IMG/VR virus record: IMGVR_UViG_3300048571_000088
Location: 1-64,000 of that record
Direction: 5' to 3' (one strand)
DNA: 64,000 nucleotides
Shown here: one piece after another, positions 36,191 to 37,718 of the stretch
Numbering within the stretch: position 1 is the stretch's first letter
How the letters are laid out: every line of letters begins with the position of its first letter
Position numbers and translations under genes: made by a program
Notes under the pieces: generated by a model
What the model saw: the letters and a program-made list of their open reading frames with translations, nothing else
The model's database searches: none
Told to the model about the DNA's origin: nothing

Positions 36191-37663
36191 TTACTGCCAA
36201 TCGTAACGAGAAGAACTAAGAGTTTCTTTCATTACATTTAACGGAGTAAAATTATCAAAATCTGTATTGAAAATCGATTTGATAATAGATGGACTATAAC
36301 CTGAAACTAATGCAGCACCTTCAGTACTTTTTTTAACTGGTAGTGGTAAGCCATCAACACGTTGCTCTCCTCCGCAAATATTCCACCAAATAATATGTGG
36401 AGTTTTATAACCTGCTGCCTTAAACAACTCGTTAATAACTTTTTGTGTGGGTTTATTTCTGACACAAGAATCATTAATTTGCATATCTGTCAAAACAAGA
36501 ATAGCTGAAGGCATGTCTTGTTGTGGTACTTTATTTTTTGTTCCTTGATTTACTACGGCTTCAATCATCTTAAAGAAATTAGTACTATAACCCACACGAG
36601 AACGTCGTGTAGTAGTAATTTTACTTTGAAGAGTTTTTGAACCAGACAGTGAAACAAACTCAGGAGTGTCTGTAAAAGTCATAAACAAATCTTTAAAAGC
36701 AGACTTGTTATTACTGGCACAATAGATTCCCATAGATAAAGCAATATGCATAGCTGAGTACTTCCCATAAGAAATACTACTCATACTTCCAGAAACATCA
36801 ACAACAGGAAGAATTGAAACACCTTCTGGCATATAGTTTGGAAGAGACTTCCACAAAGCTTCTTGCGTCGGATCAACTGCAGACCCTACAGGGATTACTT
36901 CATGAGGCCACAAAGTAGAAGCATTGATTTTTGCTTGACCTTTATCTACTTTAGCTAGATATGCTGTGTACTCATCTGGAGCATGCAATTTAAAAGCTTT
37001 TCGATAAATATTATGAGCTTTACTTGGGACATGTTGGAACTTAATGTCTTTCCAGTTTTTAGCGCACATAGGTGTTTCAACTACACTTGTATTAGCAACT
37101 AAAAGTTGACGATACTGTTTAGGTGTTAGTTTAAGACGCTTTTGAAGTAATTGAGGAAGTAAGTCATAATTAGATTTACGTTCTTCTTTTTTACGCATTT
37201 GTCGGGGAAGCCACTTAGCAAGAAGTTTATTAGGTTCTTGTTTTTGTAATTCTTCTGTAATTAAATTAAGAATAAAATTACTTGAACGCTTTTGAGTTCC
37301 TTTAAGAATTTCAAAAATATCATCCCAACGACCTACTTCAACAAAAGCTTTTACTAAGTTTGTATCTGTGATTAAAGAAGCATCCTTTTCAGACAAGGCT
37401 AAAAGAATTTCACGAGAATTATCTCGAATACCTTTTCCGCCTCGAACATCTCGCATATGCAATAAGTTTCGAATTGCTAGGTCTTGATCTTCAGCAAAAG
37501 CATTCAAAAAATCATTAACTACAGATTTGTAATTAATGTTTCCAGACTTAGCAAAAAAGTCTAAATTAATGTTTTTAGTACTTTTATAAGCGACTTGACC
37601 GTTTTCAGTTGCAGTCTTATTACTTGTTTTGCTAGCAGATTCTACAAAAGAGTTAGTTGACAT
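36191..37663 (-). CDS. DUF2828-family protein (TROVE/Ro60-like helical domain + vWA domain)
   Basis: TENG, RDVRGGKG, GRWDD, AKWLPR, YRQLL, VETPMC, MIDAS VVDVSGSM, LTDMQ, IIWWN and VSGYS. Confidence 0.85.
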   Translation of the reverse strand: MSTNSFVESASKTSNKTATENGQVAYKSTKNINLDFFAKSGNINYKSVVNDFLNAFAEDQDLAIRNLLHMRDVRGGKGIRDNSREILLALSEKDASLITDTNLVKAFVEVGRWDDIFEILKGTQKRSSNFILNLITEELQKQEPNKLLAKWLPRQMRKKEERKSNYDLLPQLLQKRLKLTPKQYRQLLVANTSVVETPMCAKNWKDIKFQHVPSKAHNIYRKAFKLHAPDEYTAYLAKVDKGQAKINASTLWPHEVIPVGSAVDPTQEALWKSLPNYMPEGVSILPVVDVSGSMSSISYGKYSAMHIALSMGIYCASNNKSAFKDLFMTFTDTPEFVSLSGSKTLQSKITTTRRSRVGYSTNFFKMIEAVVNQGTKNKVPQQDMPSAILVLTDMQINDSCVRNKPTQKVINELFKAAGYKTPHIIWWNICGGEQRVDGLPLPVKKSTEGAALVSGYSPSIIKSIFNTDFDNFTPLNVMKETLSSSRYDWQ

Positions 37664-37680
37664 GTTGGCTATTTCCTTTT

Positions 37681-37718
37681 CAGATTAGTTTAATTTTATT
37701 AGGTTGCTGACCTAATCT
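37681..37718 (-). promoter_or_regulatory. ACAGCAA-type module (copy E) abutting the Shine-Dalgarno of the DUF2828 gene
   Basis: AGAUUAG-GUCAGCAA ... CUAAUCU-G followed directly by AAAAGGAAAUAGCCAACAUG. Confidence 0.7.

What the first reader, a model, noticed from the sequence alone, without database searches (positions are those of the whole stretch)
37661..37718. Module at the DUF2828 ribosome-binding site with two alternative folds: possible autoregulatory operator
Seen: the shortest copy ends immediately before AAAAGGA (SD), 18 nt from the ATG. Its 5' strand AGAUUAGG can pair distally with CUAAUCU (module fold) or locally with CCUAAU, giving the hairpin AUUAGG-UCAGCAA-CCUAAU. Known: RNA-binding proteins often repress their own translation through a mimic of their target. 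Inference: this is the best in-sequence link between the protein and the module.
Basis: partly seen in the sequence, partly recalled or inferred. Interest (0 to 1): 0.8.

Follow-up and report, generated by a model that had tools for sequence, protein, structure and literature searches.

The report
Y-RNA-like module before phage Ro60-like gene
The hairpin in front of this phage gene is the smallest copy of a conserved RNA module that travels with genes for a Ro60-shaped RNA-binding protein, so it is most likely that protein's RNA partner (a Y-RNA relative), and its position beside the ribosome-binding site could also give feedback control.

Summary
On the minus strand, 37718-37661 reads AGAUUAGG-U-CAGCAA-CCUAAU-AAAAUUAAA-CUAAUCU-G-AAAAGGA-(10 nt)-AUG. 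The distal and local helices exclude each other and have nearly the same energy.

The element belongs to a large RNA family: a 7-bp covarying helix (AGRWUNN/NNAWYCU, then G) followed by a conserved CAGCAA strand. The family sits on the sense strand next to DUF2828/DUF7788 genes in about 80 of 97 phage loci. In 52 of them the module ends 10-18 nt before the start codon.

The protein model has the Ro60 fold (TROVE-like ring plus vWA domain). In relatives, the interior of the module is a circularly permuted tRNA-like domain that gives sub-threshold matches to Rfam YrlA. The element is therefore a divergent bacterial-type Y-RNA module and the likely ligand of the protein.

Autoregulation is plausible because the helix ends one base before the Shine-Dalgarno sequence, but it is unproven. 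Other phages place the module after the gene or in a separate transcription unit.

The 7-bp alternative hairpin occurs only in this lineage (the window and one relative at 65% protein identity), so a two-fold switch is not a family feature.

Verdict: new variant of a known kind (Ro60/Y RNA); interest moderate to high.

The parts
37712..37718 (-). P1 helix, 5' strand AGAUUAG (G 37711 follows, unpaired in P1)
   Evidence: Family-wide covariation of P1: 99.3% of cells paired, 6 of 7 pairs with changes on both sides.
37704..37709 (-). Conserved single-stranded CAGCAA, the hallmark of the module family
   Evidence: Nearly invariant in alignments A3 and A5 and in the 94 distinct module sequences listed.
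37698..37703 (-). CCUAAU, the local partner that gives the alternative hairpin AUUAGG(U)-CAGCA-(A)CCUAAU; specific to this lineage
   Evidence: Conserved only in L024, where the spacer has diverged.
37681..37688 (-). P1 helix, 3' strand CUAAUCU, plus the conserved closing G
37674..37680 (-). Shine-Dalgarno region AAAAGGA, starting 1 nt after the module
   Evidence: Read directly. The same layout (UCUG, 1-5 nt, AAGG/GAGG, then AUG) is seen in 30 distinct RBS-proximal modules.
36191..37663 (-). Gene for the 490-aa DUF2828/DUF7788 protein: Ro60-like ring plus vWA domain with a DxSxS motif
   Evidence: Pfam. PHROG 850 'RNA-binding protein', E = 2.6e-128. AF2 model pLDDT 85.9. Foldseek top hits are Ro60 structures, E = 4e-10 to 5e-6. 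Invariant D289, S291, S293, T361, D393.
37735..37843 (-). tRNA-like gene (Rfam tRNA 38.3 bits) with a 35-nt extra arm and encoded CCA, 16 nt upstream of the module; absent in the closest relative L024
25429..25483 (-). Module copy W25, directly 3' of a degenerate tRNA-like
   Evidence: R2 46.9 bits, E = 4.7e-8.
26378..26436 (-). Module copy W26, directly 3' of the tRNA-like 26445-26563
   Evidence: R2 39.3 bits.
30598..30717 (-). Module copy W30, whose interior holds the tRNA-like 30614-30675
   Evidence: R2 35.3 bits.
23204..23348 (-). Module copy W23 (P1 AGAAUGU/ACAUUCU, AACAGCAA, 130-nt interior)
27895..27921 (-). Permuted ('class A') module inside the anticodon arm of a tRNA-like: UAUUCU-GUAA-AGAAUA, then AACAGCAA. 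Further copies of this kind at 26494-26520, 40641-40667 and 43828-43854.
   Evidence: The same architecture occurs in other phage contigs.

Best explanation
The element at 37681-37718 is the smallest, RBS-proximal member of a family of Y-RNA-like modules that accompany phage genes for a Ro60-fold protein (Pfam DUF2828 + DUF7788). Each module is a 7-bp helix formed by its two ends (5'-AGRWUNN ... NNAWYCU-G-3'), followed on the 5' side by a conserved single strand (N)AACAGCAA. The interior is variable. In some relatives it is a circularly permuted tRNA-like domain, which is the topology of the bacterial Y RNA YrlA. Inferred mechanism: the module is transcribed with the gene as part of its leader. 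The Ro60-like protein binds the helix plus the CAGCAA strand, as Ro60 binds the basal stem of Y RNAs. The short copy acts like the small second Y RNA (YrlB type) that sits between YrlA and rsr in mycobacteria. Because the helix ends one base before the Shine-Dalgarno sequence, binding may also reduce translation of the protein's own mRNA; this is a secondary consequence and is not shown. Shown here: the family, its helix, its strand and its position next to the gene, the Ro60-like fold, and the YrlA-like interiors. Inferred: protein binding, processing and any regulation.
For: Family and helix. Model R1 gave 114 hits at E<=1 in 740 kb, all on the gene's strand. The helix is 99.3% paired, 6 of 7 pairs change on both sides, there are 186 compensatory cells, and slid controls are 34-48% paired. 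When the two variable helix positions were left free, 74 of 87 candidates were Watson-Crick at both, using 10 different dinucleotides, against 0 of 3 on the opposite strand. Link to the gene. 79 of 97 loci hold at least one module; 52 end 10-18 nt before the start codon and 5 start within 60 nt after the stop. Eighteen further sense-strand hits were found next to DUF2828 genes in MAG contigs. Independent recognition of this copy: R2 30.5 bits, E = 2.5e-4. The orthologous copy in L024 keeps both helices while the spacer differs. Protein. The Foldseek hits with E <= 0.001 are Ro60/TROVE+vWA structures (9kop, 9l5y, 2i91, 1yvp, 2nvo), TM 0.44-0.59. Y-RNA likeness. Interiors of L101, L085 and two EfsSzw-1 modules match Rfam YrlA at 34-46 bits, E = 4e-9 to 2.5e-5. 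The permuted order T-arm, acceptor, D-arm can be read directly. Precedent. Y RNAs are encoded next to Ro60 genes in bacteria and phages, and YrlA and YrlB lie upstream of rsr and are processed from one precursor (PMC4201824). Two Y-like RNAs lie upstream of the Thermus phage Ro60 gene (PMC12135203). Context. Pnkp/Hen1, a 2H phosphoesterase, PTH2, a TilS-like protein and many tRNAs surround the gene.
Against: There are no RNA data, so transcription, ends and binding are all inferred; no RNA-seq run was listed. This copy has no tRNA-like interior. It lacks the YrlA GNCGAA motif and gives no Rfam YrlA hit. The protein is not detected by the Pfam TROVE model. Most of the 52 RBS-proximal cases come from one freshwater clade and are not independent; about 11 distinct helix sequences are represented. 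The alignment used for the pair counts was fitted to the model. The tight, repeated spacing to the Shine-Dalgarno sequence suggests a cis role that a purely trans-acting RNA would not need.
Confidence: 0.7

Rival explanations
1. Autoregulatory translational operator. The RBS-proximal module mimics the protein's real RNA ligands; excess protein binds it and blocks the 30S subunit. This can coexist with the best explanation.
For: The helix ends 1 nt before the Shine-Dalgarno sequence. The same juxtaposition, with the module ending 10-18 nt from the AUG, occurs in 52 of 97 loci with about 11 different helix sequences. RBS-proximal copies are mostly minimal, median 55 nt, with no tRNA-like domain. 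Eight other copies in this genome could compete for the protein. Related strains show no change in 37661-37718 but at least six changes in the flanks.
Against: The arrangement is not universal. The module lies downstream of the gene in L010, L011, L016, L020 and L023. In EfsSzw-1 it is a separate transcription unit. L085 has a full YrlA-like RNA, not a minimal mimic, 23 nt before the AUG. Modules also sit 13-23 nt before unrelated small ORFs, as expected for any ncRNA gene in a compact phage genome. In the papers read here, Ro60 proteins are not reported to autoregulate. No functional data exist.
Confidence: 0.3
2. Two-state RNA switch. The local hairpin and the distal helix are alternative functional conformations that set translation on or off.
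For: The two folds are nearly iso-energetic (-6.0 against -5.3 kcal/mol), and the predicted MFE depends on context. Both partner segments are conserved in L024 although the spacer between them has diverged.
Against: Only two sequences, from one lineage, have it, and their paired segments are identical, so there is no covariation. Other family members have 0-5 weak A/U-rich pairs. L026, at 57% protein identity, has no local partner. Neither fold sequesters the Shine-Dalgarno sequence in a conserved way.
Confidence: 0.1
3. Processing or stability element. The helix marks the cleavage that separates the upstream tRNA-like RNA from the mRNA, and then protects the 5' end of the mRNA without any specific protein.
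For: It lies 16 nt after a tRNA-like gene with an encoded CCA. No promoter above chance lies nearby, so the region is probably part of a polycistronic transcript.
Against: L024 has the same module without any tRNA-like gene upstream. A plain stabiliser would not need the invariant CAGCAA strand or the invariant A-U, G-C and U-A pairs. It also would not track one protein family across distant phages.
Confidence: 0.12
4. Chance hairpin, or a DNA-level site such as an operator or recombination site, with no RNA function.
For: The folding energy is within the range of shuffled sequence.
Against: The independent model gives E = 2.5e-4. All 114 + 18 hits lie on the sense strand. The helix shows compensatory changes, including some G-U pairs. 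The module is linked to tRNA-like RNA domains in several topologies.
Confidence: 0.03

Closest known systems
Bacterial Y RNAs YrlA/YrlB with Ro60 (Rsr); Rfam RF02553; Chen et al. 2014, PMC4201824
   Same: The RNA is encoded beside, and on the same strand as, a Ro60-fold gene. A basal helix is formed by the two RNA ends, with a conserved purine-rich motif on the 5' side. In relatives the interior is a permuted tRNA mimic (T-arm, closed acceptor, D-arm). Several RNAs occur per locus, one long and one short. In M. smegmatis the RNAs lie upstream of the gene and are processed from one precursor.
   Different: The conserved motif is (N)AACAGCAA after an AGRWUNN helix, not GNCGAAN0-1G. Rfam YrlA scores are 34-46 bits against a cut-off of 69, and only for the tRNA-like core. 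The copy under study has no tRNA-like domain. The protein is DUF2828/DUF7788, which the TROVE HMM does not see. This phage also has unpermuted versions in which the module replaces the anticodon loop of a tRNA-like gene. The module abuts the RBS in half of the loci.
Thermus phage phiLo Ro60 with Yrl1/Yrl2 (PMC12135203; PDB 9KOP, 9L5Y)
   Same: It is a phage-encoded Ro60-fold protein, and these structures are the best structural matches of the model. Two Y-like RNAs lie directly upstream of its gene.
   Different: Those RNAs were picked by a CGAA motif and a stem-bulge-stem shape, whereas here the motif and helix are different. Sequence identity of the proteins in the structural alignment is 15-17%.
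Translational operators that mimic the protein's RNA substrate (E. coli thrS leader, ribosomal-protein operators); from general knowledge
   Same: A copy of the protein's RNA recognition element sits immediately upstream of the Shine-Dalgarno sequence of its own mRNA. Competition with the 30S subunit would give feedback.
   Different: No binding or repression has been shown. The arrangement is absent in part of the family. In at least one phage (L085) the RBS-proximal element is a complete Y-like RNA, not a reduced mimic.

Membership tests
YrlA-type bacterial Y RNA (Rfam RF02553) | Encoded near a Ro60-family gene, on the same strand | tested here: met
   The module ends 18 nt before the gene. 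All 114 + 18 family hits lie on the sense strand. The protein has the Ro60 fold.
YrlA-type bacterial Y RNA (Rfam RF02553) | Basal helix formed by the 5' and 3' ends of the RNA | tested here: met
   The P1 helix is 99.3% paired, and 6 of 7 pairs covary. The true RNA ends are unknown.
YrlA-type bacterial Y RNA (Rfam RF02553) | GNCGAAN0-1G motif near the 5' end (PMC4201824) | tested here: not met
   The sequence has CAGCAA and no CGAA. The family consensus is (N)AACAGCAA.
YrlA-type bacterial Y RNA (Rfam RF02553) | tRNA-like domain (T-arm, acceptor, D-arm) inside the basal helix | tested here: not met
   This copy has a 23-nt interior. The feature is met in relatives L085, L087, L101 and EfsSzw-1.
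YrlA-type bacterial Y RNA (Rfam RF02553) | Score at or above the Rfam gathering cut-off (69 bits) | tested here: not met
   This copy gives no YrlA hit. Relatives score 34.4-46.2 bits.
YrlA-type bacterial Y RNA (Rfam RF02553) | Bound and stabilised by the Ro60 protein | not testable with these tools
   This needs RIP, gel shift or northern blots. No RNA run was listed.
Ro60 / TROVE protein family | Match to the Pfam TROVE model PF05731 | tested here: not met
   Pfam finds only DUF2828 and DUF7788. TROVE has no match in the whole phage genome at E<=1, while the control genomes do match.
Ro60 / TROVE protein family | Helical-repeat ring followed by a vWA domain | tested here: met
   The AF2 model has pLDDT 85.9 and pTM 0.83. 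Full-length Foldseek matches to Ro60 structures give E = 4e-10 to 5e-6 and TM 0.44-0.59.
Ro60 / TROVE protein family | MIDAS-type DxSxS...T...D motif in the vWA domain | tested here: met
   D289, S291, S293, T361 and D393 are invariant in 34 homologues. Assigning them to a MIDAS site is inferred from the pattern.
Autoregulatory translational operator (substrate mimic) | Binding element overlaps or abuts the RBS of the protein's own mRNA | tested here: met
   The helix ends 1 nt before AAAAGGA.
Autoregulatory translational operator (substrate mimic) | The arrangement is conserved upstream of homologues | tested here: inconclusive
   It is present in 52 of 97 loci. In the others the module is downstream, distant, in a separate unit, or not found.
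Autoregulatory translational operator (substrate mimic) | The protein represses its own translation through the element | not testable with these tools
   This needs reporter fusions and toeprinting.
Two-state RNA switch | Both alternative helices are conserved, with covariation | tested here: not met
   The local 7-bp hairpin occurs only in the window and L024, with identical paired segments. Other modules have 0-5 weak pairs.

The most novel reading that the evidence does not exclude
The RBS-proximal module is a true translational operator. The Ro60-like protein represses its own synthesis by binding it, and the eight other module-bearing RNAs of this phage, most of them fused to tRNA-like domains, compete for the protein. 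Protein output would then follow the pool of free Y-like RNA. This would be, to my knowledge, the first autoregulatory circuit described for a Ro60-family protein. It would also give a function to a DUF family with thousands of phage members.
Probability: 0.3. Interest if true: 0.7.

Novelty: new variant of a known kind. Interest (0 to 1): 0.6.

Why it matters
DUF2828/DUF7788 is a large uncharacterised family: at least 5,934 proteins at E<=1e-5. No paper in the searchable library connects it with Ro60 or Y RNAs. The analysis gives the family a fold (Ro60-like) and a specific conserved RNA partner with a defined helix and motif. It shows that tRNA-linked Y-like RNAs occur in several topologies: permuted as in YrlA, unpermuted inside a tRNA-like gene, and in tandem after one. 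It also offers cultured systems, the Enterococcus Schiekvirus phages, in which binding, processing and possible feedback can be tested. The gene lies in a tRNA and RNA-repair island with Pnkp/Hen1, PTH2 and a TilS-like protein. This points to a role in the phage-host conflict over tRNA integrity.

Tried and rejected
- **Exact or near-exact repeats of the 21-nt core:** only the site itself was found. The family is degenerate and was found through repeat family D1 and motif scans.
- **Rfam:** nothing covers the element. There is only a chance-level DUF2815 hit at E = 8, and no family hit to modules in six relatives.
- **tRNA-intron reading of the module-bearing tRNA-likes (ARAGORN -i):** rejected. 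The 'spliced' anticodon stems are poor, and the inserts are the same helix + CAGCAA module in permuted order.
- **Promoter or terminator reading:** promoter-like sites are at chance level, and no U-run follows the helix.
- **Generalised scan for any 7-nt helix flanking CAGCA in the 242-kb genome:** too noisy, with 40 and 65 hits against 38 and 28 in reversed controls. Only the AGAWU-type hits were kept.
- **Conserved sequestration of the Shine-Dalgarno sequence:** the 5' flank can pair with it (CCU/AGG here, UCC/GGA in L024), but this is weak and not general. Pairing of the Shine-Dalgarno sequence with codons 6-10 is not conserved in L024.
- **RNA-seq:** no RNA run was listed. DNA contigs of related strains show only that the element is unchanged.
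- **Downstream genes after non-proximal modules:** no consistent partner gene was found.
- **PDB sequence search with the protein:** nothing found. The relation to Ro60 shows only at fold level.

Full report
**Setting.** The window is the first 64 kb of a 242.6-kb phage record from a freshwater metagenome. Nearly all ORFs in the window are on the minus strand. The finding lies just upstream of the ORF 36191-37663 (minus), a 490-aa protein matching Pfam DUF2828 and DUF7788 and PHROG 850 'RNA-binding protein'.

**Observation.** On the minus strand the stretch reads AGAUUAGG-U-CAGCAA-CCUAAU-AAAAUUAAA-CUAAUCU-G-AAAAGGA-AAUAGCCAAC-AUG, at 37718 to 37661.
- AGAUUAG can pair with the distal CUAAUCU (-5.3 kcal/mol).
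- AUUAGGU can instead pair locally with ACCUAAU (-6.0 kcal/mol).
- The two helices exclude each other. Which one the prediction prefers depends on the context folded.
- The helix ends 18 nt before the AUG and one conserved G before the Shine-Dalgarno sequence.
- By energy alone the hairpin is not above chance (z = -1.24).

**The 'module' is a real family.** A repeat search found seven copies of TAAAGAAUACUAACAGCAA-like sequence, all on the minus strand between 25 and 44 kb. A motif scan added a copy at 23204-23348. With the copy under study, that makes nine.
- Five have the helix strands at the two ends: 23204-23348, 25429-25483, 26378-26436, 30598-30717 and 37682-37718.
- Four are permuted. 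The 3'-type strand comes first, a GUAA loop joins it to the 5'-type strand, and AACAGCAA follows. These four sit in the anticodon arm of tRNA-like genes.
- All copies are associated with tRNA-like structures: inside one, enclosing one (30598-30717 encloses 30614-30675), or directly after one.
- The copy studied follows the tRNA-like 37735-37843 by 16 nt.

**Comparative evidence.** I fetched 16 + 80 phage loci and 80 MAG loci encoding DUF2828 homologues, and contigs of closer relatives.
- The motif was visible next to the gene in many of them.
- I left the two variable helix positions unconstrained. Then 74 of 87 sense-strand candidates were Watson-Crick at both positions, using ten different dinucleotides. 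On the antisense strand the figure was 0 of 3.
- A covariance model (R1) gave 114 hits at E<=1 in 740 kb, all on the sense strand.
- On the resulting alignment the helix is 99.3% paired, six of seven pairs change on both sides, and slid controls are 34-48% paired. That alignment is fitted to the model.
- The pairs A-U (1), G-C (2) and U-A (5) are nearly invariant, and so is CAGCAA. This is what is expected of a protein recognition site.
- A second model (R2) was built without any window sequence and without the orthologous RBS-proximal copy of L024 (another L024 module, 11197-11258, was in the seed). It recovers the copy studied at 30.5 bits, E = 2.5e-4.

**Position relative to the gene.** Of 97 loci, 79 hold at least one module.
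- In 52 loci the module ends 10-18 nt before the start codon (tblastn starts, checked by eye).
- In 5 loci it begins within 60 nt after the stop codon.
- In 22 loci it lies elsewhere in the locus.
- The 52 cases are dominated by one freshwater clade, but about eleven different helix sequences occur among RBS-proximal copies.
- Many loci have tandem modules. In L027 a sigma-70-type promoter is followed by three modules, the Shine-Dalgarno sequence and the gene.
- The closest relative with context (L024, 65% protein identity) has the same AGAUUAGG-UCAGCAA(A)-CCUAAU...CUAAUCUG 15 nt before its AUG. Its spacer has diverged and there is no tRNA-like gene upstream.
- L026 (57%) has AAAGAUUAG...CUAAUCUG but no local partner.

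**What the protein is.** An AlphaFold2 model built on 34 homologues (pLDDT 85.9, pTM 0.83) matches Ro60 structures over its whole length.
- The matches are Thermus phage phiLo Ro60 (9KOP, 9L5Y), Xenopus Ro60 (2I91, 1YVP) and D. radiodurans Rsr (2NVO), with E = 4e-10 to 5e-6 and TM 0.44-0.59. Isolated vWA domains follow.
- A DxSxS...T...D pattern is invariant.
- The Pfam TROVE model does not detect the protein, so the relation is at fold level.

**What the RNA is.** In L085:2839-2953, L087:2150-2257 and L101:1723-1839 the module interior reads T-arm, acceptor 3' strand, loop, acceptor 5' strand, D-arm. This is a circularly permuted tRNA, the topology of the bacterial Y RNA YrlA.
- Rfam YrlA matches these interiors below its cut-off: 41.9 and 39.2 bits, model positions 24-84 only.
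- In the cultured Enterococcus phage EfsSzw-1, an unannotated 680-nt spacer upstream of the DUF2828 gene holds a promoter-like sequence, three tandem modules and a terminator-like hairpin. A second promoter-like sequence and the gene's own RBS follow.
- Two of those three modules have permuted tRNA-like interiors, with YrlA scores of 46.2 and 34.4 bits against a cut-off of 69.
- The published YrlA motif GNCGAAN0-1G (PMC4201824) is replaced here by (N)AACAGCAA in the equivalent place.
- Known precedent: Y RNAs lie next to Ro60 genes in more than 250 bacteria and phages. M. smegmatis YrlA and YrlB lie upstream of rsr and are cut from one precursor, and each species studied has one tRNA-like and one short Y RNA (PMC4201824). 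The Thermus phage Ro60 has two Y-like RNAs directly upstream of its gene (PMC12135203).

**Interpretation.** The element is best read as a short, YrlB-like member of a divergent Y-RNA family and as the RNA ligand of a Ro60-fold protein, transcribed in the leader of that protein's gene.
- The operator idea is plausible, because the helix abuts the Shine-Dalgarno sequence and the juxtaposition recurs.
- It is not required, because downstream and separately transcribed modules exist, and a full YrlA-like RNA sits at the RBS in L085.
- The alternative hairpin is confined to one lineage and has no covariation.
- Strain-level contigs show no change within 37661-37718 and at least six changes in the 170 nt around it. 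This is only weak evidence of constraint.

**Context.** The surrounding 23-50 kb encodes Pnkp- and Hen1-like RNA-repair proteins, a 2H phosphoesterase, PTH2, a TilS-N-like PP-loop protein, a class II aaRS-like fragment, NADAR, TelA and many tRNAs. Homologous loci carry RNA ligases and PTH2. This fits the RNA-repair associations reported for ROT/TROVE proteins in jumbo phages (PMC7824862).

**Limits.**
- There are no expression or binding data.
- The loci are not phylogenetically independent.
- E-values of the home-made models are rough.
- Gene starts in the loci come from tblastn.
- The literature search covers only the held library, where no paper links DUF2828 to Ro60 or Y RNAs.

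Noticed in passing
window 45784-49888 (minus): A 2H phosphoesterase (45784-46251), a 790-aa Pnkp-like kinase/phosphatase/ligase (46255-48627) and a Hen1-like 2'-O-methyltransferase (48617-49888). Together these form a bacterial-type Pnkp/Hen1 RNA-repair cassette in a phage.
   Followed up: partly
window 30724-36093 (minus): A run of tRNA-related genes lies beside the Ro60-like gene: a TilS-N-like PP-loop protein (35449-36093), TelA (33924-35075), PTH2 (33477-33917), a class II aaRS-core-like fragment (31289-31996) and NADAR (30724-31296).
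   Followed up: partly
window 26442-26563, 27838-27958, 40587-40712, 43773-43878 (minus): Four tRNA-like genes have their anticodon loop replaced by the module (helix capped by GUAA, then AACAGCAA). These are Y-like RNAs in unpermuted tRNA topology. The same design occurs in other phage contigs (L188, L191, L194, L189).
   Followed up: partly
window 30598-30717 (minus): In this module copy the helix encloses a tRNA-like with D, anticodon and T arms but no acceptor stem (Rfam tRNA positions 6-65). The module helix appears to stand in for the acceptor stem.
   Followed up: no
L195 3939-4380 (minus) = MH791397.1, about 37400-37841: Enterococcus phage EfsSzw-1 has an unannotated 680-nt spacer with three tandem modules. 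Two are YrlA-like, at 46.2 and 34.4 bits. Each is preceded by a repeated ~45-nt segment that contains a GUUCC...GGAAC hairpin.
   Followed up: partly
window 37735-37843 and 62595-62668 (minus): Two tRNA or tRNA-like genes are predicted with the unusual anticodon AAA. The first has a 35-nt extra arm and an encoded CCA.
   Followed up: no
L037, L038, L075, L089 about 2750-2925; L027 1551-1652: Upstream of the RBS-proximal module, many loci have further modules with different helix sequences (AGGAUCG, AGGUUAG, UGGGUUAC and others) and long interiors. Only CAGCAA and the closing G are constant. Model R1 misses several of them.
   Followed up: partly
L024 244-1525; L026 1871-2959 and 9032-10144: IS605-type TnpB genes with weak Rfam HgcC hits at their 3' ends lie close to the DUF2828 loci of the nearest relatives.
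   Followed up: no
L092 2883-3010: The RBS-proximal module, the Shine-Dalgarno sequence and the first ~20 nt of the gene are followed by a second ACAUUCUG, Shine-Dalgarno sequence and gene start. This looks like a local duplication or a recombination scar.
   Followed up: no
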